Source of the DNA: Macrostomum lignano
Lineage: Eukaryota
DNA: 64,000 bases
Direction: 5' to 3'
Assembly: GCA_002269645.1 (NCBI GenBank)
Contig: NIVC01000441.1
Coordinates: forward strand, 124,001 to 188,000
Both the position numbers and the translations under genes were made by a program. The first letter of the stretch is position 1. Each line of letters starts with the position of its first letter. Positions 5,586-56,065 of the stretch are shown here, piece after piece. The notes beneath the pieces are model-generated. The model was not told the origin of the DNA and searched no databases. It saw only the letters and a program-made list of their open reading frames with translations.

Positions 5586-6473
5586 TAGTCAGGTGCTATC
5601 AACTACTACTAGTGAAGATCCCATCTATGAAAAATGATCCCAACCATGAAAGTGGCTGTCTATTGTCCTAAAAAAGAGTTGCAGCAACATTTTCCATCTT
5701 CAACACTGCAGAATTCTGGTCGACATTTCCGAGGCGGTGATCGACAAAACTCTTCAACAGAACGGGGGGCGCACAGAAAGGCCGGCTGCTTGCCCACGCA
5801 GACATTTTTAATTAATTAATTTTTAATTTTCTTATGATTTACAGCTCGCTGTCTACTTCTACGGTCTTTGTCCAAGTTGTCTGTCTGTTGTGCAATTAGT
5901 AGCCAGGACCGCTAATTGCAGTAGTTGAGAGGACTCAAGTCGCGCTTCAAATTTGGTCATAAAAAGTATTTTTGAACTGGATAGCTCAGATTGTGTGGAA
6001 ATTGGTCAATTCACTGCTATTTTAATATGGTATTGGGAGCGAACATGGCAGAAAGGGGATTTCAATTTCACAGAAGGGATATCATGTGTCTTCCCCAAAG
6101 GGGTACAAACTGGCTAGTCTAAATGTACTAAATTTGCAAAATCAGTAGGTCAGTAAAAATTTTCTATGAAGGCAGTGTCTTTTGACTACTACTACAGTAG
6201 TAAGGTATGGACAAAATTGCTGTTTTTGGCAGCTGACAAGATGACGGTCACTCATCTACTATGATTTATATTTTGCTTCACGTTTCTTCTGTTCAATGCT
6301 TATCTGCACAGTTTAATGTCCCACTTATGTTGACAAGGATCTGTGTTAAATCTACATGTGCCTTGCTTGCATTGTAACAGTCCGTGCAAATCTATGGAAT
6401 TTGAAATTACTTGAATTATACGGGAGGTGTTCAATTTGAAAGATTTACATTCTTCTAACTTTTGACGTTAAAT

Positions 6474-7293
6474 GTCAGTCAGTCAGTCAGTCAGTCAGTC
6501 AGTCAGTCAGTCAGTCAGTCAGTCAGTCAGTCAGTCAGTCAGTCAGTCAGTCAGTCAGTCAGTCAGTCAGTCAGTCAGTCAGTCAGTCAGTCAGTCAGTC
6601 AGTCAGTCAGTCAGTCAGTCAGTCAGTCAGTCAGTCAGTCAGTCAGTCAGTCAGTCAGTCAGTCAGTCAGTCAGTCAGTCAGTCAGTCAGTCAGTCAGTC
6701 AGTCAGTCAGTCAGTCAGTCAGTCAGTCAGTCAGTCAGTCAGTCAGTCAGTCAGTCAGTCAGTCAGTCAGTCAGTCAGTCAGTCAGTCAGTCAGTCAGTC
6801 AGTCAGTCAGTCAGTCAGTCAGTCAGTCAGTCAGTCAGTCAGTCAGTCAGTCAGTCAGTCAGTCAGTCAGTCAGTCAGTCAGTCAGTCAGTCAGTCAGTC
6901 AGTCAGTCAGTCAGTCAGTCAGTCAGTCAGTCAGTCAGTCAGTCAGTCAGTCAGTCAGTCAGTCAGTCAGTCAGTCAGTCAGTCAGTCAGTCAGTCAGTC
7001 AGTCAGTCAGTCAGTCAGTCAGTCAGTCAGTCAGTCAGTCAGTCAGTCAGTCAGTCAGTCAGTCAGTCAGTCAGTCAGTCAGTCAGTCAGTCAGTCAGTC
7101 AGTCAGTCAGTCAGTCAGTCAGTCAGTCAGTCAGTCAGTCAGTCAGTCAGTCAGTCAGTCAGTCAGTCAGTCAGTCAGTCAGTCAGTCAGTCAGTCAGTC
7201 AGTCAGTCAGTCAGTCAGTCAGTCAGTCAGTCAGTCAGTCAGTCAGTCAGTCAGTCAGTCAGTCAGTCAGTCAGTCAGTCAGTCAGTCAGTCA
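6474..7293 (+). repeat. (GTCA)n microsatellite, ~205 units
   Basis: Uninterrupted tetranucleotide run; source of the SQSV ORFs. Confidence 0.99.
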
Positions 7294-7662
7294 ATGGATT
7301 TCTCAATTGCATCATCAAGTTAACCTGGCTTCTTTTAAAGCAGTTCGGAATTTCCTTACAGATAAAAAACCATTCTGGAACGCAGAATTTATTAAACAGA
7401 CAGGCAGAGGCAGCGGCACTATACTTGGAAATAGGAATTGGTTTGCAAATAGTTTTCAAGTAAAAAAATGGCTCAACTTTGCAGCATAGAAAAGCGAAAC
7501 AAACACAAAAGTTGAAAAAAAACAAAAATTAACAGAAAGGGAAATACAGTGCCTGCGTGTTCGTACTGATTGAATAGATATTTATCGAGAAACAAAATTA
7601 ATGAAAAAATAAAAAGTCGAAACACACAGGAGCATATAAATGATTTTTCCCGGCTTGGAGTC

Positions 7663-8500
7663 CGGCCATAGACTACAAAAACGTATTTATTACCCACTTG
7701 GGGCCCGCCTATAGACTACAGAAACGTAATTATTACCCACTTGGGGCTGGCCATGGACTATAGAAACGTATTTATTATCCCTCTTCAGGTCCGGCCATAG
7801 ACTACAGAAACGTACTTATTACCTACTTCGGGGCCGGCCATAGACTACAGAAACGTATTTATTACCCTACTTGGGGCTGGCCATGGACTATAGAAACGTA
7901 TTTATTATCCCTCTTCGGGTCCGGCTATAGACTACAGAAACGTATTTATTACCCACTTGGGGCCCGGCCATAGACTACAGAAACGTATTTATTACCTACT
8001 TGGGGGCCGGCCATAGACTACAGAAACGTATTTATTACCCTACTTGGGGCTGGCCATGGACTATAGAAACGTACTTATTGTCCCTCTTCGGGTCCGGCTA
8101 TAGACTACAGAAACGTATTTATTACCCACTTGGGGCCCGGCCATAGACTACAGAAAAGTATTTATTACCCACTTGGGGCCCGGCCATAGACTACAGAAAC
8201 GTACTTATTACCCACTTGGGGCCCGGCCAAAGACTACAGAAACGTACTTATTACCTACTTGGGGCCCGGCCATAGACTACAGAAACGTATTTATTACCCA
8301 CTTGGGGCCCGGCCATAGACTACAGAAAAGTATTTATTACCCACTTGGGGCCCGGCCAAAGACTACAGAAACGTACTTATTACCCACTTGGGGCCCGGCC
8401 ATAGACTATAGAAACGTATTTTTTGCCTGGCGCAATAAAAGCTGCAAATAAACGTTTGTTTCTGTAGTCCATGGCCAGGCTCCAAGTGGGTAATAAATAA
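7663..8500 (+). repeat. ~41-bp minisatellite CCATAGACTACAGAAACGTATTTATTACCCACTTGGGGCCCGG with one inverted copy at ~8451-8500
   Basis: About 18 tandem units, then GTTTCTGTAGTCCATGGCCAGGCTCCAAGTGGGTAATAA, the reverse complement of a unit. Confidence 0.9.
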
Positions 8501-9134
8501 AATTATTCCCGTTTATTTCACTTGTCTATATGGCCTCGAGCGGTTTCGGCCACACCCCGACCCCATAAACGAGTCCTCAGCCGTTCGCGACCACAAAAAA
8601 TAAAACAAGAGGGGAATAACTTGCACTAAGGCATTCTAAAAAACACCAGATAGACCAGTTGCAGCAATTATCGCTTAAATAAGCTTTTCGCCATAGACGA
8701 AATATGAAAGCATCGAAATAGCCATAGATTTTCTACTCGTAGCTGTTTAAAATAGTTTAATTATAAAATCGAAACGGGCGACTCCGAGATGACACCTGGT
8801 GTTTTTAGCGTCTCAAAACCTGATAGCATTGCATTCAGGAACAACAGGCTGATAGTAGAAAGACGACACCTTCAAACTTTTAGTTGAAGGTTTAACTTCG
8901 CTTTAAAAAATTAGAATTTTTAGGCTCTACATTCTTTGACCGAAAATAGTCTATGGCAAAACCGAAGTTTTAATGGATTCCATTCTAAAAAAGCAGTGTG
9001 CAGACAGCAAGGACATCAAGCCAAGGACAACTTGATAACTCAGTTATTAAGTTGTCATTTAGTTGAACTTGTTGAACTCTAGAATATAAGCGAAATATAT
9101 AAAATAAATAAAAATTAACTGAGATGCCGTTGAG

Positions 9135-12100
9135 TCACTGGCTGGAGGCCTCCTCGGACGTCAGTCGGGGCACCGACCGAACTAGCAGCACCGCGGCGGA
9201 GCTTCGGCACTGGGCGTGCAGCTCCGACACGGTGGCCGCCTCCCAGGCCTGACCGCGTCCTCGGCCGCCGCCGCCGCCGCCGCCGCCACTGCTGCTAACG
9301 CTGCTACTGCGACTGCTGGCGCTGCTGCGGCTGCCGCCAATGCCGGCCGCCCTGCTGAAACAGCCGTTGGAGACGGCGTCGAAATTCGGACCCATGGAGA
9401 CCGGCTGGCGGGTTGAGGCCACCCTGTAGCCGAGCTCCTGGCACAGGGTCTGCGGGTTGAGTGGGAGAGGAATTTCGGCTTGGGGGAATTTTGAGTTAGG
9501 GGAAGTTTCGGGTTGGGGGAGTTTCGGGTTGGGTGGAATTTTGAGTTAGGGGAAGTTTCGGGTTGGGGGAGTTTCGGGTTGGGGGAGTTTCAGGTTGGGG
9601 GAGTTTCGGGTTGGATGGAATTTTGAGTTAGGGGAAGTTTCGGGTTGGGGGAGTTTCGGGTTGGGGGAGTTTCGGGTTGGGGAGTTTCGGGTTGGGGGAG
9701 TTTCGGGTTGGATGGAATTTTGAGTTAGGGGGATTTCGGGTTGGGGGAGTTTCGGGTTGGATGGAATTTTGAGTTAGGGGAAGTTTCGGGTTGGGGGAGT
9801 TTCGGGTTGGGGATTTCGGGTTGGATGGAATTTTGAGTTAGAGGGATTTCGGGTTCGGGTTTCGGGTTGGGGGGTTTCGGGTTGGGGGAATTTCGGGTTG
9901 GGGGAGTTTAAGGTTGGGGGAGTTTCGGGTTGGGGGATTTCGGGTTGGATGGAATTTTGTGTTAGAGGGATTTCGGGTTCGGGGTTTCCGGTTGGGGGGT
10001 TTCGGGTTGGGGGAATTTCGGGTTGGATGGAATTTTGAGTTAGGGGGATTTCGGGTTGGGGGAGTTTCGGGTTGGGGGAGTTTCGGGTTGGATGGAATTT
10101 TGAGTTAGGGGATTTCGGGTTGGGGGAGTTTCGGGTTGGGGGAGTTTCGGGTTGGGGGAATTTCGGGTTGGATGGAATTTTGAGTTAGGGGGATTTCGGG
10201 TTGGGGGAGTTTCGGGTTGGGGGAGTTTCGGGTTGGATGGAATTTTGAGTTAGGGGATTTCGGGTTGGGGGAGTTTCGGGTTGGGGGAGTTTCGGGTTGG
10301 GGGAATTTCGGGTTGGATGGAATTTTGAGTTAGGGGGGTTTCGGGTTGGGGAGATTTCGGGTTAGGGGAATTTCGGGTTGGGGCATTTTGGGTGAGGAAA
10401 TTCCATCTAAATGTCGAATTTTGAGACAGCTCCCCGGAGACTGACAAGCACATCCCCAAGCACGCCGTGAGCGGATAGGCAGGCAATCGAGAGAATTCCC
10501 AGTCCCAGTTTCTGCCCAACCTGAGTAACCAAATCGTCCGCCACGCGGATCGCCAGGCCGCAGCCAAGCAGCTGGGCGCAGTGCAGTAGCAGGTGCTCCG
10601 CCAGGTCGGCCAGCCGCAGGAAGCGAAGCGCCCTGACGCCGCCGCTGCCGCCGCCGCCAGCGAAGCTCGGAAATCGAACTCGAAGAACCCGGCAGACGGA
10701 GCCGAGCTCCTCCGAGGCCGGCGAAAGCTGCTGCTGCTGCTCAGCCTTCGCGGCAGCAGCGCAGGCGGCGGAGTCGAAGCCGGCCTCGCCAGCGTCGGCG
10801 GCGGCTCCGGCGATGCCGGTCTCGATGACGCGGAATTCCACCAGGGCGGCCACCCGGCCGGAGCCGCCGACGTCCAGCAGGCGAAAGCTGCCGACGCTGC
10901 CGGCGAAGTCCGGGCCCTCCATCCGGTAGGTGGCCTCCGTGTGCAGCAGGTGGCTCTCCCAGGCCGGCCAGCGACTGTCAGCCTGCGGCGGCGGCTCCGG
11001 GCAGCTCAGCAGCCGGCCGAGACCGCCGCCTCCGGCTGGCCGCTTCCCGCCAGCGGGCGTCGCTGCCGCCTCCACCAGCTGCCGAGTTGCCGCCGTCCAG
11101 GCGTCGCTGCCACCGCTGTCCTCAGCTTCTTTGCCGCCTTTGCCGCCGTCACTGCCGCCGCCGCCCAGGTCGTCATCGGCGAAGGCGGGCTGGCGCACGG
11201 CCCGCAGATCCGGCAGCTCCCACAGACGGCGTCGGGGCACCGCGGAACAGTCGGCGAGGACACCGACTGGGCAGGCGGGTTGGACAAGTGAAGGTTGCAA
11301 AAATGACGTAACATTGGAAGTCTACGTATAGGAAGCACACATAAAGGTCACGAGACGCCAAATTAGGAATGTCACAAGGAGCCAAACTGAGGTCACAGAG
11401 CGCCAAACTGAGGTCACAGAGCGCCAAACTGAGGTCACAGAGCGCCAAACTGAGGTCACAGGGTGCCAAACTGAGGTCATAAGAAGCCAAACTGAGGTCA
11501 CAGGGTGCCAAACTGAGGTCACAGGGTGCCAAACAGAGGTCACAGGGTGTCAAACTGAGGTCATAGGACGCCAAACTGAGGTCATAGGACGCCAAACTGA
11601 GGTCATAGGACGCCAAACTGAGGTCACAGGGCGCCAAATTGGAGAGGTCAGGCGATAAAATGAGGAGGTCACGGGGTCACAAAAAGACTACAAAAATTCT
11701 CCCAAACCTTTAATCTCAAATTTCATAGAAATTTCACGCATCAGCGGCGCCGTAGAGAAGCGCCGACACTCCGGCGCTGGTGCCATCGCCAATAGGCGCC
11801 CGGCGCTACCCGGCGCCGCCAGCAGTTGCCAGCCGATGCCGGCGGCGGCTTCAACGGCGGCCAGAGCGGCCGGGTCGGACCGGCCGTAGCAAAGCAGGTG
11901 GCCGGTGGCACCCGGCACCTGTCCGAGATCGCCAGTCCGCAGCGCCGACGCCCAAGCGGCCTCCGACCCGATGTCCCTGCCGTCGTCGGAGTCGACGTCG
12001 TTGAGCAGCAGCAGGCGGATCTCGCCGAGCTGCCCGGCCGGCAGCGGCCTGCCGCGCTGGTCGGTGACGGCCAGCCGGACATTTGGAGCGGCCTCGGACA

Positions 12101-14870
12101 GAGCCAGCAGACTGTCGGACAGCTGTCGGACCTCGGCCACGTCGGCCGGGCAGCGGTAGATGCCGTAGGCGGCGGCTCCGCAGGCCTCCACGCTGGCGTA
12201 CAGGCAGCCGAGGGTGCGGCCGGCGCCCAGCTGCCTGTAGAATTCATCTGCCGTGCGCGGCGACAGCGGCTCGCCGATGACCAGGACGGTCTCTAGCGAG
12301 GCCAGCTGGGCGCGGGCAGCCGGCCGGTTGGCCGTGTGGCTGAGCAGATCCGTCAGGAAGCTGGGGCTGGCCACCAGCCTGGTGGCGTAGCTGCATTTCG
12401 ATGGCGGGCAAACAGATGATGGCAGAATGAACGGCGATGTCACTCTTAGGTAACAGTCAATGACGTCAATGGTCTGACGTTCCCCATCAACTGTCATTCA
12501 TTCCCCATCAACTGTCATTAATTCCCCATTAACTGTCATTAATTCCCCATGAACTGTCATTAATTCCCCATGAACTGTCATTAATTCCCCATCAACTGTC
12601 ATTAATTCCCCATCAACTGTCATTAATTCCCCATCAACTGTCATTAATTCCCCATCAACTGTCATTAATTCCCCATCAACTGTCATTCATTCCCCATCAA
12701 CTGTCATTCATTCCCCATCAACTTTAATTAATTCCCCATCAACTGTCATTAATTCCCCATCAACTGTCATTAATTCCCCATCAGCTTTCATTCATTCCCC
12801 ATCAACTGTTATTCATTCCCCATCAACTTTCATTCATTCCCCATCAACTGTCATTCAATAACTGTAAAATATTGTTTTAAACTATCTGTAGTTTCTCATG
12901 GGCTTTTATAATTCCACATTAGCCAACTGTAATTCCCCCATTAGCTAACTGTAATTCTCCATCAACAGTCAACCACACCGGCCCGCAGGCCTTGCCAAAG
13001 ACTCACTGAGCCCTGACCAGCTTCAGCCAGGCGTCCCAGCGGCCGCAGCCTGGGCACATCAGCAGCGGGATGCCGTTCAGCAGGGCGCTTAGCGCGTGCA
13101 CCCGCCAGTAGGCGCTGTCACAGGAGTCGCCAATCCACAGCACCTCGTGGCACTGCCAGGGCAGGGTGTCCCGCAGCCAGTTGGCCGCAGCCAGCAGCTG
13201 GCCCTGGGTCAGGCTGACCAACCGGCCGCCCATGGATTCAACCACAATGGCCACCGCGCAGCAGGCCGAGTCCGCGTCGGCCACCACCACCGGCCGCTCC
13301 TCGTCCTGCAGGTCGCGGTCGGACAGGCCCAGAGCTTCGCCGGCCTCGGCCAGATCCTCGAACTGGAGCGCCAGGGCCAGCGCGGGCGCCAGGCTGCGAA
13401 GCTCGGGCAGGCGAGCCGCTGCACAGGCCGCTGCCACCAGGGCCACCGGCTTCGCCGCCTTCAACGCTGCCTGCAGGCCGACCAGCATTCGGGCAAAGTC
13501 GCCGTCCTCCGGCTGCTCCAGGCCCAGTAGCGGCAGGCCGAGCTTCAGCGCCGCCAGCTCCAGCGCCAGGCGGTCCGGCCCGCATGGCATGACGACGCAG
13601 AGGGCCGCGCCGCCGCCGCCGCCGCCGCCGCAAACGTCGATGCCGTGCGAGCGCAGGGTGCGCAACAGGCAGCGCGCCAAAAAGTTGGCCCGCTGGCTGA
13701 GCTCACCGAAGGTGACGCAGGAGCCGGCGGCGGCGGCGGGCGGGCACCACCAGAGAGCCGGGTCCTTGGCAGTCGGTGTCAGGTTGTTATTAAAGTGCAC
13801 AAGGTCCTCCAGGATGCGGCTGATTGGGCCGTCGCGGCGTCCGACGCCCGGCTTGCGGGGCCCGCGCAGCACCGAGACGGGTTCGGCGCCCTGCTGCTGC
13901 TGACGGCGAGCTGCTTGGGGGTGAGATTTGGTTGCTTGGGAAGTCAGTCTGCTAGCTCGCTGATTCCCATATTGACTCATTCAGTAGGACGCTTCACCTC
14001 AATCTTGACACCCAGCATGAGATTCCCTCCTGACCACCCTCAGTATCCAGCATGAGACTTCCTCCTGACCAACCTCAGTATCCAGCATGAGACTCCCTCC
14101 TGACCACCCTCAGTATCCAGCATGAGACTTCCTCCTGACCAACCTCAGTATCCAGCATGAGACTCCCTCCTGACCACCCTCAGTATCTAATATGAGATTC
14201 CCTCCTGACCACCCTCAGTATCCAGCATGAGACTCCCTACTGACCGCCCTCAGAATCCAGCATGAGACTCCCTACTGACCGCCCTCAGTATCCAGCATGA
14301 GACTCCCTACTGACCGCCCTCAGTATCCAGCATGAGATTCCCTCCTGACCACCCTCAGTATCCAGAATGAGATTCCCTCCTGACCAACCTCAGTATCCAG
14401 CATGAGACTCCCTCCTGACCACCCTCAGTATCCAGCATGAGACTTCCTCCTGACCAACCTCAGTATCCAGCATGAGACTCCCTCCTGACCACCCTCAGTA
14501 TCTAATATGAGATTCCCTCCTGACCACCCTCAGTATCCAGCATGAGATTCCCTCCTGACCACCCTCAGTATCCAGCATGAGACTCCCTACTGACCGCCCT
14601 CAGTATCCAGCATGAGACTCCCTACTGACCACCCTCAGTATCCAGCATGAGACTCCCTACTGACCGCCCTCAGTATCCAGCATGAGATTCCCTCCTGACC
14701 GCCCTCAGTATCCAGCATGAGATTCCCTCCTGACCCTCAATACCCAGCATCCCTGCTGGAGATAGCATCCTGCATCAAAGTGGCTCACCGTCAGACCTGT
14801 TGAGCATCTCGCCCAGTCCGGCAAACGCCAATCGAAACTTGTCCTCCAACCGGTTTAATCCAGTTGACAT
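9135..14870 (-). CDS. Ebony-like single-module NRPS homologue (degenerate adenylation domain, thiolation remnant, AANAT-fold C-terminal domain), ~900 aa
   Basis: Five phase-consistent exons: 14870-14789, 13913-13007 (or 13910, NAGNAG), 12390-11738, 11266-10521, 9449-9135; 2703 nt. Collinear with Ebony as recalled: VSVLRGP, VTFGELSQRANFLAR (A1), CDS (A4), TRLVASPSFL, IGEPLS, YASVE (A5), GQLGEI (A6), LRTGDLG (A7), YGRSD (A8), and C-terminal EHLLLHCAQ...VTQ|TLCQELGY similar to Ebony EHEVLRVAR...LTQQL...Y. Confidence 0.8.
9480..10400 (+). repeat. G-rich compound minisatellite (GGAGTTTCGGGTTGGG / GGAATTTTGAGTTAGGG) filling pseudo-NRPS intron 4
   Basis: Alternating 16-bp and ~19-bp subunits with dense GGG runs. 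Confidence 0.95.
11375..11640 (+). repeat. 21-bp minisatellite GCCAAACTGAGGTCACAGAGC (pseudo-NRPS intron 3)
   Basis: About 12 units. Confidence 0.95.
12480..12860 (+). repeat. 21-bp minisatellite TTCCCCATCAACTGTCATTAA (pseudo-NRPS intron 2)
   Basis: About 18 units. Confidence 0.95.
14015..14740 (+). repeat. 35-bp minisatellite CCAGCATGAGATTCCCTCCTGACCACCCTCAGTAT (pseudo-NRPS intron 1)
   Basis: About 21 units. Confidence 0.95.
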
Positions 14871-15584
14871 TCGAATGATTTAATGATTTGAGAAATCGGT
14901 TTTAAAGCCTCGGGGCTAACTGCAGAGCCGTGTGAGTGTCGCAGCGAAATTAATAGCCAGTGGGACGGGACCGAGGAGGCAGCGGAGCCCCCCGAGACAG
15001 CAGTAATTACGAGTACGAGGCCTAGACAGGCGACACGAGGGGCCTCAAACAGCGCTCGAAGTCTGACTGCACTGAATAATAACAGACTGGCGCATGGCTC
15101 AAGCGGCTTTTTATTATTAACAAAATACTGCTCAGAAGACTAACTGTATAAGAACTTCAAAGTACGTCGAGGCCTCCCTTATAAACCCCTCACCCCATTC
15201 GCCCACGTCTATAGCTACAGTCAGTCAGCCAGTCTTGCAACACAGTTCCTACTCAGAGCTGGCCAAATAAGGGAAATCAGCTCTCTGCTCTACTCAGGCC
15301 AGAGCACACGTGCACAAACATGCACCCAGACATGCACACTAGTTTTGCTTAGTGCTCATTTTTCTCCAGGCCAGAGCCAGCGCACACACCACTGTATTGG
15401 TGATATATCGATTAATTTGTCCCTTCTGGATTAGACGAAACTTTTCTGCACTACTTTACGTATATTGCCAGTTAGTCATAGCAGCATAAATGATTATGCG
15501 TTGGGCAAGAGAGCCAAGTGGAGTACAGGATAAGAAATGCAATACTGCTAGTTTCACAAGTTGTGCAACGGATAAGAGAGAGGG

Positions 15585-17700
15585 GAAACGGAGAGAGGAA
15601 CAGGGTAGAGGGAAGACTGGAAGAGAAGAGAGGAAAAAAGAAGAGATGGGAGGGGAGAGGGAAAAGGGAGGGGAAGAGAGGGAAAAGGAAGAGATGGGAG
15701 GGGAGAGGGAACAGGGAGGGGAAGAGAGGGGAAAGGAAGAGAGGGAAGGGAAGAGGGAAGAGGGAAGAGGGAGAATTGAAGCAGAGGGGAGGGGGAGAGA
15801 GGAGAGATATGAGAGGGAAAGGGAGAGGGGAGATATGAGAGGGAAAGGGAGAGGGGAGATATGAGAGGGAAAGGGAGAGGAGAGATATGAGAGGGGAAGA
15901 GAGGGGAGATATGAGAGGGAAAGGGAGAGGGGAGATATGAGAGGGAAAGGGAGAGGGGAGATATGAGAGGGAAAGGGAGAGGGGAGATATGAGAGGGAAA
16001 GGGAGAGGGGAGATATGAGAGGGAAAGGGAGAGGGGAGATATGAGAGGGAAAGGGAGAGGGAAGATATGAGAGGGAAAGGGAGAGGGGAGATATGAGAGG
16101 GAAAGGGAGAGGAGAGATATGAGAGGGGAAGAGAGGGGAGATATGAGAGGGGAAGAGAGGAGAGATATGAGAGGGAAAGGGAGAGGGAAGATATGAGAGG
16201 GAAAGGGAGAGGGGAGATATGAGAGGGAAAGGGAGAGGGGAGATATGAGAGGGAAAGGGAGAGGGGAGATATGAGAGGGAAAGGGAGAGGGGAGATATGA
16301 GAGGGAAAGGGAGAGGGGAGATATGAGAGGGAAAGGGAGAGGGGAGATATGAGAGGGAAAGGGAGAGGGGAGATATGAGAGGGAAAGGGAGAGGGGAGAT
16401 ATGAGAGGGAAAGGGAGAGGGGAGATATGAGAGGGAAAGGGAGAGGGGAGATATGAGAGGGAAAGGGAGAGGGAAGATATGAGAGGGAAAGGGAGAGGGG
16501 AGATATGATAGGGAAAGGGAGAGGAGAGATATGAGAGGGGAAGAGAGGGGAGATATGAGAGGGGAAGAGAGGAGAGATATGAGAGGGGAAGAGAGGGAGA
16601 GATATGAGAGGGGAAGGGAGAGGGGAGATATGAGAGGGAAAGGGAGAGGGGAGATATGAGAGGGGAAGAGAGGGGAGATATGAGAGGGGAAGGGAGAGGG
16701 GAGATATGAGAGGGGAAGAGAGCGGAGATATGAGAGGGGAAGAGAGGGGAGATATGAGAGGGGAAGAGAGGGGAGATATGAGAGGGGAAGAGAGGGGAGA
16801 TATGAGAGGGGAAGGGAGGGGAGATATGAGAGGGGAAGGGAGAGGGGAGATATGAGAGGGGAAGAGAGGGGAGATATGAGAGGGGAAGAGAGGGGAGATA
16901 TGAGAGGGGAAGGGAGAGGGGAGATATGAGAGGGGAAGAGAGGGGAGATATGAGAGGGGAAGAGAGGGGAGATATGAGAGGGGAAGAGAGGGGAGATATG
17001 AGAGGGGAAGAGGGGAGATATGAGAGGGGAAGGGAGAGGGGAGATATGAGAGGGGAAGGGAGAGGGGAGATATGAGAGGGGAAGGGAGAGGGGAGACATG
17101 AGAGGGGAAGAGAGGGGAGACATGAGAGGGGAAGAGAGGGGAGATATGAGAGGGGAAGAGAGGGGAGATATGAGAGGGGAAGAGAGGGGAGATATGAGAG
17201 GGGAAGGGAGAGGGGAGATATGAGAGGGGAAGGGAGAGGGGAGACATGAGAGGGGAAGAGAGGGGAGACATGAGAGGGGAAGAGAGGGGAGATATGAGAG
17301 GGGAAGAGAGGGGAGATATGAGAGGGGAAGAGAGGGGAGATATGAGAGGGGAAGAGAGGGGAGATATGAGAGGGGAAGGGAGAGGGGAGATATGAGAGGG
17401 GAAGGGAGAGGGGAGACATGAGAGGGGAAGAGAGGGGAGACATGAGAGGGGAAGAGAGGGGAGATATGAGAGGGGAAGGGAGAGGGGAGATATGAGAGGG
17501 GAAGAGAGGGGAGATATGAGAGGGGAAGGGAGAGGGGAGATATGAGAGGGGAAGAGAGGGGAGATATGAGAGGGGAAGGGAGAGGGGAGATATGAGAGGG
17601 GAAGAGAGGGGAGAGATATGAGAGGGGAAGGGAGAGGGGAGATATGAGAGGGGAAGAGAGGGGAGATATGAGAGGGGAAGGGAGAGGGGAGATGGTAAGG
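15585..17700 (+). repeat. Purine-rich 24/26-bp minisatellite GAGATATGAGAGGGGAAGAGAGGG
   Basis: 2.1-kb nearly pure G/A strand; source of the spurious 600-770-aa PLSS ORFs. Confidence 0.97.
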
Positions 17701-18784
17701 GAAGAAAGCAGGGAGAGGCGAGAGAAAGTGGCCGATATGCAGCGCAAGAAACTAATTCCATAAAAAACCACAAATTTGATTTTTGTTGTTGTTAAAAAGC
17801 AATCACTGACAATGGCATTTGATTTTTTATTTATTTCTTATTTTCTGATCGTGATGACGCATAAAGTGAAGAATTTTGGAACAGCCGGGTACGTGGTCAT
17901 AACAAAAATAATAGATAAGCAATGTTAATAAACAAATTCTAATAAATTTGGATCGAACAGAAGTCTGAGCATTTAGACACGAGCAAACGGGCAAAGATTA
18001 GGGAAAGACAATACAGAGAAAAGTACAACGCAAGCAATAATTAAATCGGAGCCCAAATCGGAAAGAGATTTGTTGGGACTGTCTGTCTGAATAAGGCAGA
18101 TTAATGACAAAATTAATGCATACTCACTATTCAGTAGGCTAAACCACAGAACAGAATAAACAAACACTTTTTCGCTAAGAATGGCTCACTAACTATTTAA
18201 TACTTTTTATAACTTACTACTGAAACAAGTAGCATTGACATTGAATAAAATCAGCGCCAGAAGACAACACAGCGGGGCTGGCAAGCAATTTGAAACAGCC
18301 GGAGGGCCATAGTTTTATACTACTTAGTATCAGTAGCTTACAAAAAATGTTTTTAATATAGTTTTCTCTGGTGCTTCAATTATGGAGCTAGCTGTACGTA
18401 TGTGGGCGTCCGTGCGGTTGCGGACGATTTTAATAATGTAACACTCACACTTTAATAAATTCAATTCCAAGCAGGTGAACAAAGTGTGGCTACAGATTAA
18501 ACACAGTTAATCCAGTTAATCTTCACATCTGGCAAACTAAAGACTAGACTTACAGGGATTAAGTGTAATAAAAGAAAAAATATGAGACGCAGTTAAAATT
18601 ATGATTTCTAAGCAGAAAACAGCATCATGAACTCGATGCGCTTTGATTATTCTGGAATAATTCTGGACACACTACAGTAAATCAAATCTTTAATGAGTCA
18701 TTCTTCTGCATGCATGTAGCATCTAGATAGAACGGCTACTGTAACTGGATACCTGAAAGGTTGGTACCTACGCAGATCTATACA

Positions 18785-19272
18785 TGCGTATGCGTGGATA
18801 TCCGTACATGGGTATGCGTGGATATCCGTACATGGGTATGCGTGGACATCCGTACATGGGTATGCGTAGATATCCGTAGATGGGTATGCGTGGATATCCG
18901 TAGATGGGTACACGCGGATATCCGTAGATGGGTATGCGTGGATATCCGTAGATGGGTATGCGTAGATATCCGTAGATGGGTACACGTGGATATCCGTAGA
19001 TGGGTATGCGTGGATATCCGTAGATGGGTATGCGTGGACATCCGTAGATGGGTACACGTGGATATCCGTAGATGGGTACACGTGGATATCCGTAGATGGG
19101 TATGCGTGGATATCCGTAGATGGGTATGCGTGGATATCCGTACATGGGTATGCGTGGATATCCGTAGATGGGTATGCGTGGATATCCGTAGATGGGTATG
19201 CGTGGATATCCGTAGATGGGTATGCGTGGATATCCGTAGATGGGTATGCGTGGATATCCGTAGATGGGTACC
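18785..19272 (+). repeat. 24-bp minisatellite GTGGATATCCGTAGATGGGTATGC just 3' of the nuclear receptor stop codon
   Basis: About 20 units. Confidence 0.95.
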
Positions 19273-19337
19273 TGTGTAGTGGGCATCTGTATCTGGATAA
19301 CTATAAATAGGTATCAGCGGACAGGAACAGACAAATT

Positions 19338-22300
19338 CTACGGAATCGAATTGATCCCAAGCTGACCGCCGCAGCCAGATGACGAAGCCTCAGTAACAAC
19401 TTGTACATCCTGATTGGCCTGATTTGGCTGGGCAGTATCGGACAGATCTGAGGACACGTGCGGCACATTGCCTAACGAGAAGGTGAGCATCTCGGTTACT
19501 AAGGGTGGCGGAGTGTATGGCGTACGCTGCAGCACTCTCAACCAGTAGCCAACCGTGAGAACTCGGACAGCCTCTAGCAGGCCGTCCAGCGATAGCAGAC
19601 GGGCCCGGCGGGTGGCGCTGGGACAAACGGAACGGAACTCGGCAATGTAGCGCTCCTGTAGCCTATCAATGGCTGGCCGATCCTCCCAGCTATAAGACGG
19701 CGGCGCCTCCAACAAAAAGACAACCTTCAATAGTAGGAACTCAGCCTCGGTGAGGCCTAGGCGAGTCAGCAAATTGGCAAAGCAGCGCAGCAGGCGGCCG
19801 CTTCTAACGGGAATCCGGCCGGCGAACAGGGAGGGCGCATCGTCGCGAATCCAGAAATTGCGGCACAGCTTCAGGTGGCCGTCGTAGGGCGTGGATTGAT
19901 AGACGATCTGGATTGAGGAATGCAGGCGCTAGGCTTTTTGCTTTTTGCTTATAATGCTCACTCTGTTCCATTCTTAATCTTGCTCAGTGCTCACTCTGTT
20001 CCATTCTGAATCTTGCTCAGTGCTCACTCTGTTCCATTCTTAATCTTGCTCAGTGCTCACTCTGTTCCATTCTTAATCTTGCTCAGTGCTCACTCTGTTT
20101 CATTCTTAATCTTGCTCAGTGCTCACTCTGTTCCACTCTTAATCTTGCTCAGTGCTCACTCTGTTCTATTCTTAATCTTGCTCAGTGCTCACTCTGTTCC
20201 ACTCTTAATCTTGCTCAGTGCTCACTCTGTTCTATTCTTAATCTTGCTCAGTGCTCACTCTGTTCCACTCTTAATCTTGCTCAGTGCTCACTCTGTTCCA
20301 TTCTTAATCTTGCTCAGTGCTCACTCTGTTCCATTCTTAATCTTGCTCAGTGCTCACTCTGTTCCATTCTTAATCTTGCTCAGTGCTCACTCTGTTCCAT
20401 TCTTAATCTTGCTCAGTGCTCACTCTGTTCCACTCTTAATCTTGCTCAGTGCTCACTCTGTTCTATTCTTAATCTTGCTCAGTGCTCACTCTGTTCCATT
20501 CTTAATCTTGCTCAGTGCTCACTCTGTTCCATTCTTAATCTTGCTCAGTGCTCACTCTGTTCCATTCTTAATCTTGCTCAGTGCTCACTCTGTTCCACTC
20601 TTAATCTTGCTCAGTGCTCACTCTGTTCTATTCTTAATCTTGCTCAGTGCTCACTCTGTTCCATTCTTAATCTTGCTCAGTGCTCACTCTGTTCCATTCT
20701 TAATCTTGCTCAGTGCTCACTCTGTTCCACTCTTAATCTTGCTCAGTGCTCACTCTGTTCTATTCTTAATCTTGCTCAGTGCTCAGTCTGTTCTATTCTT
20801 AATCTTGCTCAGTGCTCACTCTGTTCCACTCTTAATCTTGCTCAGTGCTCACTCTGTTCTATTCTTAATCTTGCTCAGTGCTCACTCTGTTCCATTCTTA
20901 ATGTTGCTCAGTGGTCACTCTGTTCCATTCTTAATCTTGCTCAGTGCTCACTCTGTTCCATTCTGAATCTTGCTCAGTGCTCACTCTGTTCCATTCTTAA
21001 TCTTGCTCAGTGCTCACTCTGTTCCACTCTTAATCCTGCTCAGTGCTCACTCTGTTCCATTCTTAATCTTGCTCAGTGCTCACTCTGTTCCACTCTTAAT
21101 CTTGCTCAGTGCTCACTCTGTTCCATTCTTAATCTTGCTCAGTGCTCACTCTGTTCCATTCTTTATCTTGCTCAAATCGTGATTCTCGAGACTCAAACTT
21201 GCTCAAGTGTCATTCTAACAGATTCCTAATTTACAGCAGTCCGCAAAGTACTAATCCCCTCCCACGCAGCCAAGGTCTCACCTGCCAAGCGACCAGGTTA
21301 AGCCAGCGCAGCTGCAGCATCTGTACCCGATCTGGCATCGGCAGGGCAGCGAATCCGGTCAAATGCTTGGCAAAAGCCACCAGATCGTTGGCGTGCTTGT
21401 TGAAGCAGATGCCCAACAGCAAGGCGTGCCGCTCTGATTGGCTGGCTACGCCGGCTAGGCTGGAGTCCGACATGTCGATGTCGCTCACCAGCTCGTCGAT
21501 GCAGGTGCAGCGCAGCTGCTGAACAATTTCTCTGCCTAGGCCGGCTTCAGCGGCGGCAGCCAGCGCGGCAGCCGCCTCCGACTCCTTGGCGGCCGACTCG
21601 GCTATCAGCTGCTGGATGTACGCTGGCGGCTGGCGGGAAGCCATTGAAAACGCCGCGTTGCTGGCACTTGAGTTCGCGCCGTTGGAGGCTGCGTTGTCGG
21701 CTGGCGCGGTGATCACTGACGATGGCAGCAAAGGCGGCAGCTGGTTGGTTGACTCGGCGTCTCTCTGGCTGCCGACAACCGGCTGCTGGACGGGCGATGC
21801 AGAGCGGACAAGACGGATCTGCCAATGTTGATTTGGAGTGCCGCATTTGAAATTCTAATACACCGATTTTGAAGTTCTAATACACCGATTTTGAAGTTCT
21901 AATACACCGCTTTTGAAATCCTAATACACCGATTTTGAAATCCTAATACACCGATTTTGAAATCCTAATACACCGATTTTGAAATCCTAATACACCGATT
22001 TTGAAATCCTAATACACCGATTTTGAAATCCTAATACACCGATTTTGAAATCCTAATACACCGATTTTGAAATCCTAATACACCGATTTTGAAATCCTAA
22101 TACACCGATTTTGAAATCCTAATACACCGATTTTGAAATCCTAATACACCGATTTTGAAATCATAATACACCACTAACGAAATCCTAATTCTCGTACACT
22201 ATACGAGAAGTACACTATTGAGAAATATGCCAATAACAGACTCGAACCTGCATAGAAGCCTCGAGACAGCGCTTCCACCGGCAGGCAGGGCACTGCCGCT

Positions 22301-22619
22301 TGTTGCGCACGCGCACCGGGCAGCGGGAGCCGGAGCGCTGCACCGGGCAGAAGTAGGTCAGACAGGAGTTCACAGTGCGCTTAAAGAACGCTTTGCAAGC
22401 TTCGCAGGTCAGCGCGCCATAGTGATGCCCAGATGCGCGCCTATGGCACACTCGGCACTGCTGCTGTTGCTGTTGTTGCTTCTTCTTTCTCTGTTGCTGC
22501 TTTCGATGCTTTTTAACGCTGTTGTTTTTATTATTGATGACGCCGTTGCTAGGGCCGTTGCTATGGCCATTGCCAGAGTGGGCTATGCCGGCTGGTGGCG
22601 TCTGCTCCTCAGTATGCAT
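19338..22619 (-). CDS. ERR: Nuclear receptor, ERR/NR3B-like (C4 zinc-finger DBD plus ligand-binding domain), ~492 aa
   Basis: Exons 22619-22248, 21818-21282, 19907-19338, all phase 0. The DBD is CRVC...HYGALTCEACKAFFKRT...C..C...CPACRWKRC, with the EACKA P-box typical of ERR. LBD signature LVAFAKHLTGFAALPMPDRVQMLQLRW, then IVYQSTPYDGHL (ERR IVYRSLPYDDKL) and an AF-2-like LVTEML. Confidence 0.85.
19955..21175 (+). repeat. 33-bp minisatellite CTCAGTGCTCACTCTGTTCCATTCTTAATCTTG (nuclear receptor intron 2)
   Basis: About 37 units; source of the SAHSVPFLILL ORFs. Confidence 0.97.
21853..22172 (+). repeat. 22-bp minisatellite TTTTGAAATCCTAATACACCGA (nuclear receptor intron 1)
   Basis: About 14 near-identical units. 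Confidence 0.97.
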
Positions 22620-31573: not shown

Positions 31574-32492
31574 CGAGGTGTGGCCAAAAAGTAACGAGAA
31601 TTCAGCTACAAAAACTTTCAGAACAAAAAATTGCAAATTCAGTCAACTGCAGCCTTCAAAGTAATTGCCGCCACTCTCAACGCATCGCCTCAATCGCTGG
31701 TGCCAGCTCCTGATGCAGCCCTGGTAGTCCTCCTTCGTGATGCCTCTCAGCACCCCTGTCACGCTCTCCTTGATGGCGTCCAAGTATTCAAATCTGGATC
31801 CTTTGAGTACCTGCTTCACCTTGGGAAAGAGCCAGAAATCGCTCGGCGCCATATCCGGTGAATAAGGTGGGTGGCTCAACTCTGCGACCTGTCTTTTGGC
31901 CAAAAACTATCTCACTGAGAGTGCTTTGAGAGAGCAACTTTGGCACCATCTTCGCACACAGCTTCCTCATGCTAAGATCTTCGACAATAATGTTTCTGAC
32001 TGACTCCTTGGCCATGCCCAACTCAGCAGCGATCATTCTGATGGTAAGACGTCGATCAGCATGAACCAAATCTCGCACCCTGGACACATTCTCATCAGTT
32101 CTTGCAGTCGAGGGTTGTCCAGTCTTCTGAATGTCATCGACACTCTCCCGTCCATCCTGGAATCGCTTGTGCCACTCATACACCCTCGCCTGAGACATAG
32201 CATCATCTCCGTACACCTCACGAAGTAGCTGGAGGCATTCCGATGGCTTCTTGCCAAGTTTCACCAAAAACTTGATGTTGACTCGTTGCTCGTTGTTCAT
32301 TTTGTGACACAGCAGTATGACAGCTATAATTAAAAATAATAAAAAAATTATGAAAAACAAAACAATTTGGCAAAATACTGATTTCTATAAACACTGAGAA
32401 GCTGAGCTTCAAGGAGACATCGTTTGATTTTAGTAAAAGCTCGTATTTTCAGATTTAAACAGTAATTCTCGTTACTTTTTGGCCACACCTCG
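31574..32492 (-). mobile_element. Mariner (Tc1/mariner DD34D) transposon, internally deleted, probably irritans-like subfamily
   Basis: Perfect TIR CGAGGTGTGGCCAAAAAGTAACGAGAATT / AATTCTCGTTACTTTTTGGCCACACCTCG with TA on both sides. The length is 919 bp versus ~1.3 kb typical for full-length mariners. Confidence 0.95.
31643..32300 (-). pseudogene. Mariner transposase pseudogene
   Basis: MNNEQRVNIKFLVKLGK...KLCAKMVPKLLSQ is joined out of frame near 31925 to ALSVR*FLAK...HPPYSPDMAPSDFWLFPKVK...GNYFE. The segment carrying the first two catalytic Asp residues is missing and there is an in-frame TAG. Confidence 0.9.
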
Positions 32493-39090: not shown

Positions 39091-39614
39091 AAATCTGAGT
39101 CCTTTCGGAGCCAAGAACCGTTAGCACCGAGATTTTATTGAAGGCCTGTGTGATTTTTCAAGCCACGGCACCATCCTATTGTGAATTATTTCTTAAAAAT
39201 AGGTACTCGATATTAACTTCGATATTGTAGACTTATTTGTTTTATTATAACTTTGTTAATTGAAGCTGTTAATTCATGTTTAAAGTAATTTGGATTTCCG
39301 ATATCAATTCCTAATGCCAGTTATTAGTTGCACTTGATAACAAAATGCATAGCAAAATGCTCATTCTCGAAATCCTGCACGCCAATCTATTGGTAGGCTT
39401 GATGAATTGGCAGAAAGTTGCTGCTTTTATAATCTTCGCGCTGCCCTTAACCTTATCGAATTGTGCTTTTTTATTTCCCGAATACATAGCATGCCAAATT
39501 GTAATTGACCACATTGATTTTGTCAAAAATCACTTTATTTATATTGTTAGTAGTTATGCTTTTTAATTGTATCTCGAATGTTTTACTCCTCAAATTACCT
39601 CTTTAATTTCTATC

Positions 39615-40650
39615 TACCAATCTATGGGTCTCAGACACCAGTATATGGGTGCTAGACACCAATATATGGGTCTCAGGCACCAATCTATGGGTTCTAGACA
39701 CCAATCTATGGGTGCTAGAGACGAATCTATGGGTGCTAGACACCAATTTATAGGTCTCAGACATCAATCTATGGGTCTCAGGCACTAATCCATGGGTTCT
39801 AGACACCAATCTATGGGTCTCAGGCACCAATCTATGGGTGCTAGACACCAATCTATGGGTCTCAGGCACCAATCTATGGGTTCTAGACACCAATCTATGG
39901 GTCTCAGGCACCAATCTATGGGTGCTAGACACCAATCTATGGGTCTCAGGCACCAATCTATGGGTGCTAGACACCAATCTATGGGTCTCAGGCACCAATC
40001 TATGGGTGCTAGACACCAATCTATGGGTCTCAGGCACCAATCTATGGGTGCTAGACACCAATCTATGGGTCTCAGGCACCAATCTATGGGTGCTAGACAC
40101 CAATCTATGGGTCTCAGGCACCAATCTATGGGTGCTAGACACCAATCTATGGGTGCTAGACACCAATCTATGGGTACTAGACACCAATCTATGGGTCTCA
40201 GGCACCAATCTATGGGTGCTAGACACCAATCTATGGGTCTCAGGCACCAATCTATGGGTGCTAGACACCAATCTATGGGTCTCAGGCACCAATCTATGGG
40301 TGCTAGACACCAATCTATGGGTCTCAGGCACCAATCTATGGGTGCTAGACACCAATCTATGGGTCTCAGGCACCAATCTATGGGTGCTAGACACCAATCT
40401 ATGGGTCTCAGGCACCAATCTATGGGTGCTAGACACCAATCTATGGGTGCTAAACACCAATCTATGGGTTCTAGACACCAATCTATGGGTGCTAGACACC
40501 AATCTATGGGTGCTAGACACCAATCTATGGGTACTAGACACCAATCTATGGGTCTCAGGCACCAATCTATGGGTGCTAGACACCAATCTATGGGTGCTAG
40601 ACACCAATCTATGGGTACTAGACACCAATCTATGGGTCTTAGACACCAAT
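39615..40650 (+). repeat. 21-bp minisatellite with 42-bp higher-order alternation (CACCAATCTATGGGT + GCTAGA / CTCAGG)
   Basis: About 49 units with alternating variants. Confidence 0.97.
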
Positions 40651-41619
40651 CCAGCCAGAATGATATTGTCCCTCACGTTCCCATTAACAGCCAGCGACCC
40701 ACTATATTGTTGGTTAATTAAAATCCAGGTGATGTTCTCATGCCCCAGTTAATGAGCTTTGCGCGTAAATTAACAACCGCCACGCGGCACTATATTCACT
40801 AATTTCTGAGGTTTAAACTGTCGGTGTGTCTAGAATATGTACAGAACCCAATGCCTAATAACGTATTTAATGTTTAAAGTTTCCCGTCCTGCTGTCATTT
40901 GGTACTGCATACTTGTGTGTGCCTGTTTTAATGTTATTTTCATTTTTCAAAAAACACTTTTCCAACAAATCTGTTTTTGGCAGCACCGGCAGAGAAGGGA
41001 CTACCTTTTTTATTTTTGCTTATTTTCCACACGGACCAAACGTCATTTTAGCATCTTTGTATTAATTACCGACCTACTTCCAAGTGTCTGTTGATAGTAA
41101 GTTGATGATATTTATGATACTCAAGTGCCTGCACTGTAATTAGGTAATTAATACGCGTGTGTGTAATTTTATTATAATTCCATTCACACACGGACCCTTT
41201 ACTCTAGCATATTAATTAATGTAGACATGTTTGCTAAAAGCGAAATTTTCCTGCTCACCTTTAATTTACAATAATAATTCTGAATTGTAGAACACCGGAA
41301 CAGACCCTCTATACATTCCCGAAGAAATAAGCCGGCTTATTTATTTCTCATTATCGACACTATTATTCATTTATATACTTGTTACCACTACGACCTTTAA
41401 TATATAAAATAGTTTCGAATAAATCAACGATATGTCGTTTCTCGTATCATTCCTTCAACTGCGTATCTATATAAATTATGCGAGCCTATATATATATATT
41501 TATACAGCAGATCAAGCTTACTAAATTATACAGGCTAATTGTTGCCTCGTCATTTCTTTGTGCGCAAACAGAATGACAGTGGAAGGCAAAACATGAAATC
41601 AGCCTTACTTGACCTCTTC

Positions 41620-51660: not shown

Positions 51661-56065
<4,405 letters not shown>

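What the first reader, a model, noticed from the sequence alone, without database searches (positions are those of the whole stretch)
9135..14870. Intact but catalytically gutted Ebony/NRPS homologue: a candidate animal pseudo-NRPS
Seen: five clean exons give ~900 aa with no stop or frameshift, collinear with Ebony from the first motif to the last. The A3 P-loop (Ebony YTSGSTGVPKG) reads VVESMGGRLVSL. A5 YGSTE is YASVE. A6 loses its GxNLAxGY half. A8 stops after YGRSD (no QVKIRGHRVDL). There is no A10 NGK lysine (the aligned region is PRRRLWELPDL). After a helix-1 remnant (DAWTAATRQLVEAA), the thiolation domain and its GGxS phosphopantetheine serine appear deleted. The A4 substrate Asp (CDS), A7 RTGD and the AANAT-fold C-terminus are retained. 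Known: Ebony makes beta-alanyl-dopamine and beta-alanyl-histamine, and flatworm Ebony-like NRPSs make beta-alanyl-tryptamine, a sexual-development signal in schistosomes and planarians. Inference: an ORF kept open despite losing every catalytic requirement suggests a repurposed pseudoenzyme, such as an amine or beta-alanyl-amine binder, a dominant-negative regulator of an active paralogue, or a scaffold.
Basis: partly seen in the sequence, partly recalled or inferred. Interest (0 to 1): 0.82.

Follow-up and report, generated by a model that had tools for sequence, protein, structure and literature searches.

The report
Catalytically dead Ebony-like NRPS relic gene
A flatworm (Macrostomum lignano) gene descended from an Ebony-type peptide synthetase has lost every residue needed for catalysis, yet it is still an open, transcribed reading frame that evolves under purifying selection, so it is probably a repurposed "dead enzyme" rather than junk.

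Summary
The finding is real. The window comes from Macrostomum lignano, scaffold NIVC01000441. The interval 9135-14870 (minus strand) is the annotated gene BOX15_Mlig000265g3: five GT-AG exons encoding 909 aa.

**What survives.** Only the N-terminal adenylation core is recognisable (Pfam AMP-binding E 2.5e-19; AF2 pLDDT 70-90; Foldseek E about 1e-24 to NRPS A domains). Its best relatives are Ebony-like A-T-CTD proteins of annelids and nemerteans.

**What is lost.** The A3 P-loop, most of A6, the A8 hairpin, the A10 lysine and a detectable thiolation domain are gone.

- The A4 aspartate aligns to a tyrosine, so it is not retained.
- The "retained AANAT-fold C-terminus" is only a roughly 40-aa relic (p about 0.01). 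The last 400 aa are low-complexity and cannot be modelled.

**Evidence against a plain pseudogene.**
- P(no stop by chance) is about 1e-7.
- dN/dS is 0.17 against a second genomic copy (P = 2e-4).
- The annotation is RNA-seq-guided, and published read counts are low and not gonad-specific.

**Caveats.**
- The second copy carries two frameshifts.
- No orthologue was found.
- A published survey lists Sm-NRPS homologues for the other flatworms it lists but not for M. lignano. This may therefore be the only descendant, not a regulator of an active paralogue.

The parts
14789..14870 (-). Exon 1 (start ATG at 14870; 27 codons + 1 nt). Encodes an N-terminal helix absent from Ebony-like relatives.
   Evidence: GTGAGC donor. 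Conserved in the second copy.
13007..13910 (-). Exon 2. First half of the adenylation core: A1 (13696-13716), A2 (13516-13548), degenerate A3 P-loop AIVVESMGGRLVSL (13210-13251), and the A4 region DSCDSAYW (13105-13128). An in-frame NAGNAG alternative acceptor lies at 13913.
11708..12390 (-). Exon 3. Second half of the adenylation core and the stump of the C-terminal subdomain: A5 YASVE (12177-12203), A6 remnant (11997-12035), A7 LRTGD (11922-11942), and truncated A8 YGRSDPAA (11865-11891). An in-frame alternative donor lies at 11738.
10521..11266 (-). Exon 4. A10 position without lysine, AVPRRRLWEL (11214-11243). Glycine-rich remnant of the thiolation region, DSGGSDAWTAATRQLVEAA (11064-11120). 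Low-complexity middle. Start of the only Ebony-CTD-like stretch (from 10613).
   Evidence: The annotated donor CAG|GTTGGG fits the Ebony alignment better than the longer exon ending at 10446.
9135..9449 (-). Exon 5. End of the CTD-like stretch (TLCQELGYRV), a Ser/Gly-rich tail, and the stop codon at 9135-9137.
13911..14788 (-). Intron 1, mostly a 35-nt minisatellite (14012-14735, about 21 copies).
12391..13006 (-). Intron 2, mostly a 21-nt minisatellite (12480-12855, about 18 copies).
11267..11707 (-). Intron 3, mostly a 21-nt minisatellite (11371-11638, about 13 copies). It sits between the A9 and A10 positions and holds no coding potential for them.
9450..10520 (-). Intron 4, mostly a 16/65/145-nt nested tandem array (9469-10383).

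Best explanation
This is an expressed, selectively maintained but catalytically dead descendant of an Ebony-type (adenylation-thiolation-C-terminal domain) nonribosomal peptide synthetase in the free-living flatworm Macrostomum lignano.

**Shown.**
- The N-terminal subdomain of the adenylation domain (about aa 55-500) still folds like an NRPS A domain.
- The ATP-binding P-loop (A3), the aligned A4 substrate aspartate, most of A6, the A8 hairpin, the A10 catalytic lysine and a recognisable carrier domain with its phosphopantetheine serine are all missing.
- The last 400 residues are alanine/glycine/serine-rich and cannot be modelled, apart from a roughly 40-residue relic of the Ebony C-terminal domain.
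- The reading frame is intact and shows strong codon periodicity.
- The protein sequence has been under purifying selection since a recent duplication.

**Inferred.**
- The protein cannot adenylate beta-alanine, cannot carry a thioester and cannot condense an amine.
- Whatever it does is therefore non-catalytic. Most likely the surviving A-core acts as a folded binding or scaffold module attached to a long disordered tail.
- It may be the only surviving member of this family in M. lignano, rather than a partner of an active paralogue.
For: - **Identity of the locus:**
- **A-core homology:** Pfam AMP-binding 69.8 bits, E 2.5e-19. Ebony-like HMM 97.5 bits over aa 90-454. In a whole-library HMMER search the best non-self hits are Ebony-like A-T-CTD proteins, E 3e-17 to 1e-9.
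- **Fold:** AF2 pLDDT 70-90 for aa 55-500, with Foldseek E about 1e-24 and TM up to 0.8 to NRPS A domains.
- **Motif losses:**. No PP-binding hit. No hidden exon.
- **Constraint:** no stop in 909 codons, P about 1e-7; GC1/2/3 = 0.73/0.56/0.845. Against the second copy there are 13 synonymous and 6 nonsynonymous differences, dN/dS 0.17, binomial P 2e-4, and dS 0.018 is comparable to flank divergence.
- **Expression:** the GenBank gene models derive from a StringTie/TACO RNA-seq assembly (PMC5730564). Mlig000265.g4, with length 2730 nt equal to this CDS, has 65/31/42/39 reads in the positional fragments and baseMean about 30 in the social dataset. It is classed 'Non-Specific' (PMC7336406).
- **Ebony affinity:** the Ebony-like profile beats the other-NRPS profile by 6.4 bits, whereas non-NRPS outgroups prefer the other profile by 74-99 bits. 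The weak CTD similarity is collinear.
Against: - The second copy (scaffold NIVC01000525) has a 1-nt deletion in exon 2 and a 1-nt insertion in exon 3. If these are real, at least one copy is dispensable.
- No orthologue at 50-90% identity was found anywhere, so selection is measured on only 19 substitutions.
- Expression is low.
- Half of the protein is low-complexity, with AF2 pLDDT 20-37.
- Neighbour-joining places the A-core on a long branch with no bootstrap support, so Ebony-clade origin is probable, not proven.
- No biochemical data exist.
Confidence: 0.6

Rival explanations
1. It is a decaying unprocessed pseudogene, or a gene in the process of being lost. The family lost its function in the Macrostomum lineage. 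The window copy is simply the copy that has not yet acquired a disabling mutation, and the residual transcription is noise.
For: - The sister copy carries two frameshifts.
- Read counts are low.
- Divergence from relatives is extreme and homopolymeric amino-acid runs have expanded.
- The C-terminal 400 aa cannot be modelled.
- No orthologues were detected.
Against: - The divergence from intact relatives (18-29% identity, with all motifs gone) implies a long time since catalytic loss. Yet 909 codons remain open, P about 1e-7.
- dN/dS is 0.17, with P = 2e-4 against neutrality.
- Frame-breaking indels are far rarer in exons than in flanks.
- The frameshifts in copy 2 lie in a PacBio/Canu assembly of duplicated sequence and may be assembly errors.
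Confidence: 0.22
2. It is still an enzyme. The A-core catalyses a different reaction with a non-canonical nucleotide site, or the protein works with a separate carrier protein.
For: - A5 Glu, A7 TGD and A8 GRxD survive.
- Purifying selection is present.
Against: - By established knowledge of the ANL superfamily, the P-loop, the A8 hairpin and the A10 lysine are jointly required for adenylate formation. All three are absent here, together with the aligned A4 Asp.
- The C-terminal subdomain that must rotate onto the active site is not recognisable.
Confidence: 0.05
3. It is a dead adenylation protein, but it does not derive from the Ebony/Sm-NRPS lineage. It would instead derive from another NRPS or ANL gene, and the Ebony-like collinearity of the tail would be coincidental.
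For: - The NJ tree is unresolved, and P0001 groups with long-branch outgroups.
- A bacterial-type multimodular NRPS ranks second among non-self hits, at 1.1e-13 against 3.4e-17.
- The T domain and CTD are not significantly detectable by HMMER.
Against: - The top hit and most of the top ten are Ebony-like.
- The Ebony-like profile is preferred by 6.4 bits, while true outgroups prefer the other profile by 74-99 bits.
- The CTD-like stretch lies at the collinear position (p about 0.007-0.018).
- The overall length and single-module layout match.
- Ebony-like NRPSs are the NRPS type reported in flatworms (PMC10531068, PMC11214079).
Confidence: 0.13

Closest known systems
Drosophila Ebony and Ebony-like beta-alanyl-bioamine NRPSs of annelids and nemerteans (A-T-CTD; CTD structure PDB 6DYM)
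   Same: - They are the best database relatives of the A-core.
- They share the single-module layout, a length of about 850-900 aa and collinear order.
- A1, A2, A5 Glu, A7 and GRxD are retained.
- There is weak collinear similarity to the last helix-strand of the CTD.
   Different: - A3, the aligned A4 Asp, A6, the A8 hairpin and the A10 Lys are lost.
- There is no PP-binding domain.
- The CTD is not recognisable by HMMER, AF2 or Foldseek.
- Large low-complexity insertions are present.
- Identity is only 18-22% over the full alignment and 26-29% in the core.
Flatworm NRPSs that make beta-alanyl-tryptamine (Schistosoma mansoni Sm-NRPS; Schmidtea mediterranea NRPS)
   Same: They belong to the same phylum and to the same Ebony-related family according to the literature (PMC11214079, PMC10531068).
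   Different: - Those enzymes are active and are expressed in reproductive niche or male-specific cells.
- This protein lacks all catalytic motifs and is classed as not gonad-specific.
- M. lignano is missing from the published list of Sm-NRPS-like hits.
ANL superfamily / Pfam AMP-binding (PF00501)
   Same: The protein passes the Pfam gathering threshold (69.8 against 29.9 bits), and the predicted fold matches NRPS A domains, luciferases and acyl-CoA synthetases.
   Different: Only profile positions 180-372 of 384 match. The P-loop region is not matched, and there is no AMP-binding_C hit.
Inactive adenylation domain of ubiquitin E1 enzymes (analogy only; different fold)
   Same: It shares the concept: a dead copy of an adenylating module kept as a structural partner (literature hits; established knowledge).
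   Different: It is an unrelated superfamily, and it sits in the same polypeptide as an active domain. No active partner is known here.

Membership tests
ANL superfamily (AMP-binding, PF00501) | Significant match to the family profile and the A-core fold | tested here: met
   - Pfam E 2.5e-19, 69.8 bits against a cut-off of 29.9.
- AF2 pLDDT 70-90 for aa 55-500.
- Foldseek E about 1e-24 to NRPS A domains.
ANL superfamily (AMP-binding, PF00501) | Catalytic core motifs A3 (P-loop), A8 and A10 lysine | tested here: not met
   Alignments show AIVVESMGGRLV in place of the P-loop, an 8-aa deletion at A8, and AVPRRR in place of GKxDR.
Ebony-type NRPS (A-T-CTD) | A-core closest to Ebony-like proteins | tested here: inconclusive
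   - Best hits are Ebony-like.
- The Ebony-like profile is preferred by 6.4 bits.
- The NJ tree is unresolved, with support at or below 0.2.
Ebony-type NRPS (A-T-CTD) | Thiolation domain with a GGxS phosphopantetheine serine | tested here: not met
   - No Pfam PP-binding hit.
- T-domain HMM against shuffles gives p about 0.05, with the alignment off the motif.
- An in-frame GGSD exists only in a glycine-rich run.
Ebony-type NRPS (A-T-CTD) | Ebony C-terminal (AANAT-like) condensation domain | tested here: inconclusive
   - hhalign E 0.018 over 62 collinear columns.
- 15 of 2000 shuffles reach the real HMM score.
- AF2 pLDDT 40.7 and no Foldseek match.
- As a positive control, a relative's CTD hits 6DYM at 1.5e-20.
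Ebony-type NRPS (A-T-CTD) | A4 aspartate that binds the substrate amino group | tested here: not met
   The aspartate aligns to Tyr295 in both MAFFT and HMMER alignments.
Pseudoenzyme | Homologous to an enzyme family, lacking its catalytic residues, yet maintained and expressed | tested here: met
   - Homology and motif loss as above.
- dN/dS 0.17, P 2e-4.
- Open frame, P about 1e-7.
- RNA-seq-based gene model and published read counts.
Pseudoenzyme | Demonstrated lack of catalytic activity and a demonstrated non-catalytic role | not testable with these tools
   This needs biochemistry and RNAi.
Unprocessed pseudogene | Disabling mutations and neutral evolution | tested here: not met
   The window copy has no stop or frameshift, and dN/dS is 0.17. 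The sister copy does have two frameshifts, which are unverified at read level.

The most novel reading that the evidence does not exclude
This dead gene (with its near-identical duplicate) is the only surviving Ebony/Sm-NRPS family member in Macrostomum lignano. On that reading, the beta-alanyl-tryptamine-type NRPS signal used by planarians and schistosomes for sexual development was lost or replaced in Macrostomorpha. The synthetase scaffold was then co-opted for a non-catalytic role, which would make it the first NRPS-derived pseudoenzyme described in an animal.
Probability: 0.3. Interest if true: 0.6.

Novelty: new variant of a known kind. Interest (0 to 1): 0.45.

Why it matters
Ebony-like NRPSs make signalling and pigment dipeptides in insects. 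In flatworms they make a trigger of sexual maturation.

M. lignano is a laboratory model for flatworm reproduction and regeneration. If its only family member is catalytically dead yet conserved, two things follow. First, the NRPS signal is not universal among flatworms. Second, an NRPS adenylation scaffold can be retained for a non-enzymatic job in an animal.

The gene is easy to test in this species by RNAi, in situ hybridisation and LC-MS for beta-alanyl-amines. If it instead turns out to be a decaying gene, it documents lineage-specific loss of the pathway.

Tried and rejected
- **Longer exon models.** My first gene model used a longer exon 4 (ending at 10446) and a shorter exon 3 (925 aa). 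I rejected it in favour of the annotated junctions. These reproduce P0001 exactly, come from RNA-seq-guided assembly and align better to Ebony (VADDLVTQTLCQELGY against VNTHxVTxxxxxxxGY).
- **Word-indexed homologue searches.** Searches with the full protein and with the A-core found only the two M. lignano copies. A search with a CTD profile returned nothing at all, not even the query's own members, so it says nothing either way.
- **In-frame GGSD as a shifted phosphopantetheine site.** Rejected: it is not significant (p about 0.05) and lies in a glycine-rich run.
- **Hidden exons restoring TSGSTG, GKxD or GGxS.** None exists in six frames of 6000-19000. The introns are minisatellites.
- **Structure of the C-terminal half.** AF2 with Ebony-like alignments gave pLDDT 20-41, and Foldseek found no match.
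- **Phylogeny.** A Biopython bootstrap run timed out. My own NJ with 200 bootstraps was unresolved because of long-branch attraction.
- **Intact M. lignano paralogue.** None was found among the 30 relatives whose names could be looked up. The tools cannot scan the M. lignano genome itself.
- **Expression tables.** Three other papers' supplements had no entry for the gene.
- **Chen et al. 2022 (Cell).** The paper is not held.
Full report
**Locus and gene model.**
The region is GC-rich (about 62%) within an AT-richer window, and the coding strand is the minus strand. Six-frame translation shows four long open segments plus a short first exon. Joining them at GT-AG sites gives an uninterrupted ORF.

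A protein search identified the product as Macrostomum lignano BOX15_Mlig000265g3 (P0001, 909 aa), on scaffold NIVC01000441 of assembly GCA_002269645.1. The gene span corresponds exactly to window 9135-14870. P0001 differs from my first model only in three in-frame splice choices.

With the annotated junctions the exons are 14870-14789, 13910-13007, 12390-11708, 11266-10521 and 9449-9135. The CDS is 2730 nt and reproduces P0001 residue for residue. Each of the four introns consists largely of its own minisatellite.

**What the protein is related to.**
Pfam finds only AMP-binding (E 2.5e-19, aa 260-454, profile 180-372 of 384). There is no PP-binding or AMP-binding_C hit. PDB sequence hits are weak and all to adenylation domains.

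An exhaustive HMMER search of 1.84 billion representatives gave only 65 hits at E <= 1e-3. Apart from itself and a second M. lignano copy, the best hit is 3.4e-17 (26% identity over aa 91-459).

The top hits of 750-880 aa come from the annelid Owenia fusiformis and the nemertean Tubulanus polymorphus. The latter are named 'beta-alanyl-bioamine nonribosomal peptide synthetase ebony-like'. These relatives have strong AMP-binding plus PP-binding domains. The C-terminal domain of the one tested (P0014) matches the Ebony structure 6DYM at 1.5e-20.

**Motif-by-motif check.**
I aligned P0001 to nine of these relatives and to an HMM built from them (97.5 bits over aa 90-454).

| Motif | Ebony-like relatives | P0001 |
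|---|---|---|
| A1 | | VTFGELS (kept) |
| A2 | | LKLGLPLLGLE (kept) |
| A3 P-loop | LYTSGSTGxPKG | AIVVESMGGRLV |
| A4 | FVDS | SAYW |
| A5 | YGSTE | YASVE |
| A6 | | only GE kept |
| A7 | | LRTGD (kept) |
| A8 | GRxDxQVKIRGxR | GRSDPAA, with an 8-residue deletion |
| A10 | GKxDR | AVPRRR |

At A4, the substrate aspartate falls opposite Tyr295.

Tests against shuffled sequence show three things. Only the A7-A8 stretch of the C-terminal subdomain is detectable (p about 0.002-0.004). The thiolation region is not detectable (p about 0.05). The Ebony C-terminal domain is represented only by aa 775-815 at the collinear position (15 of 2000 shuffles; hhalign E 0.018).

No frame of 6000-19000 hides a P-loop, GKxD or GGxS exon.

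**Structure.**
AF2 with the Ebony-like alignment folds aa 55-500 with pLDDT 70-90. Residues 500-909 get pLDDT 20-37, and the P-loop position is below 50. The model's core matches NRPS A domains, luciferases and acyl-CoA synthetases (Foldseek E about 1e-24, TM up to 0.8).

The C-terminal part folded alone reaches only pLDDT 40.7 and matches nothing. That half is 54% Ala+Gly+Ser+Pro+Arg, with poly-G, poly-A, poly-Q and poly-S runs.

**Gene or pseudogene?**
- *Open frame.* The stop-codon density in the other five frames of the exons is 1.7%. An open 909-codon frame therefore has P about 1e-7. GC at codon positions 1/2/3 is 0.73/0.56/0.845.
- *Second copy.* A duplicate with the same neighbours lies on scaffold NIVC01000525 (P0002, L002). 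The sequenced DV1 line carries duplicated large chromosomes (PMC5730564).
- *Substitutions.* Exon-by-exon alignment gives 13 synonymous and 6 nonsynonymous differences. dS is 0.018, dN is 0.0031 and dN/dS is 0.17. The binomial P is 2e-4 against neutrality. Flanking non-coding divergence is 0.7-3.7%.
- *Indels in copy 2.* The second copy has a 1-nt deletion in exon 2 and a 1-nt insertion in exon 3, plus two in-frame repeat-length changes. Whether the frameshifts are real or residual errors of a PacBio/Canu assembly of duplicated sequence cannot be decided here.

**Expression.**
The GenBank models of this assembly are derived from a genome-guided RNA-seq assembly. In Brand et al. 2020 (PMC7336406, Table S8), transcript Mlig000265.g4 has length 2730, exactly this CDS. 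It has 65/31/42/39 reads in fragments A-D (D is the whole worm) and sits in the low-expression bin, class 'Non-Specific'. In the social dataset, baseMean is about 30 with no differential expression. Equating g4 (v3 numbering) with g3 (GenBank) is my inference from the shared cluster number and the identical length.

**Origin and paralogues.**
By raw distance the nearest A-cores are Ebony-like. However, an NJ tree puts P0001 on a long branch with outgroups, and no node has support above 0.2.

Profile competition gives 146.4 bits for the Ebony-like profile against 140.0 for other NRPS. True Ebony-likes prefer their own profile by 60-190 bits. Non-NRPS outgroups prefer the other profile by 74-99 bits. 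Ebony-clade origin is therefore probable, not proven.

None of the 30 relatives whose names I could look up is from M. lignano. In Wurlitzer-type survey data (PMC10531068), both M. lignano assemblies are in the genome list (Table S1). The table of Sm-NRPS-like hits (Table S5) has 34 flatworm entries and none from M. lignano. This is indirect, but it suggests that no canonical family member exists in this species.

**Conclusion.**
The sequence observation is essentially right, with two corrections: the A4 Asp and the AANAT-like C-terminus are not demonstrably retained. One nuance applies: the T region was degraded in place rather than deleted.

The best reading is a transcribed, constrained, catalytically dead derivative of an Ebony-type NRPS. 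Its function is unknown. By inference it is non-catalytic, with a folded A-core plus a disordered tail.

The main rival is a gene caught in the act of decay. No paper in the searched library mentions an NRPS in Macrostomum.

Noticed in passing
window 9469-10383, 11371-11638, 12480-12855, 14012-14735: Each of the four introns of this gene is filled by a different minisatellite (periods 16/65/145, 21, 21 and 35 nt). In the duplicate copy, intron 1 is about 2.7 kb instead of 0.88 kb, so the arrays change length quickly.
   Followed up: partly
L002 about 8506 and about 10334 (window equivalents about 13744 and 11915/11914): The second genomic copy (BOX15_Mlig024094g1) has a 1-nt deletion in a CCC run of exon 2 and a 1-nt insertion in exon 3. 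Its annotated 540-aa protein starts in the wrong frame and runs through the insertion into the right frame. These may be real pseudogenisation or assembly error.
   Followed up: partly
window 11080-11094, minus strand, alternative frame inside exon 4: An out-of-frame 'LDGGNSA' lies 6-9 codons downstream of the in-frame GGSD, at the place where relatives have the FFxIGGNSxNA carrier motif. It could be a relic of the original serine motif left in a shifted frame, or chance in a GGC-rich stretch.
   Followed up: no
window 13910/13913, 11708/11738, 10521/10452/10446: There are several in-frame alternative splice sites: a NAGNAG acceptor at exon 2 and alternative donors at exons 3 and 4. These could give 909-925-aa isoforms.
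   Followed up: partly
window 19338-22619, minus strand: A nuclear hormone receptor gene (zf-C4, E 2e-20; ligand-binding exons downstream) is the upstream neighbour. The same neighbour flanks the duplicate copy, so the duplication is segmental or chromosomal.
   Followed up: partly
window 6462-7463, 15456-17773, 18761-19286, 20013-20966, 39603-40752, 49022-50873, 53437-54762, 55288-55836: Many long tandem arrays produce spurious ORFs of 170-770 aa in several frames. The array at 16-18 kb has a GC skew of 0.9.
   Followed up: no
window 31788-32360, minus strand: An ORF with the HTH domain of Mos1/mariner transposases (Pfam HTH_48, E 2.5e-9) sits in the AT-rich middle of the window. It is probably a transposon remnant.
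   Followed up: partly
window 36082-36720 (+), 42407-43081 (+), 63479-63883 (-): Other gene fragments are present: an SH3-domain exon, a Tcp11-family exon (E 1e-25) and the first part of ribosomal protein L18 (E 2e-41).
   Followed up: partly
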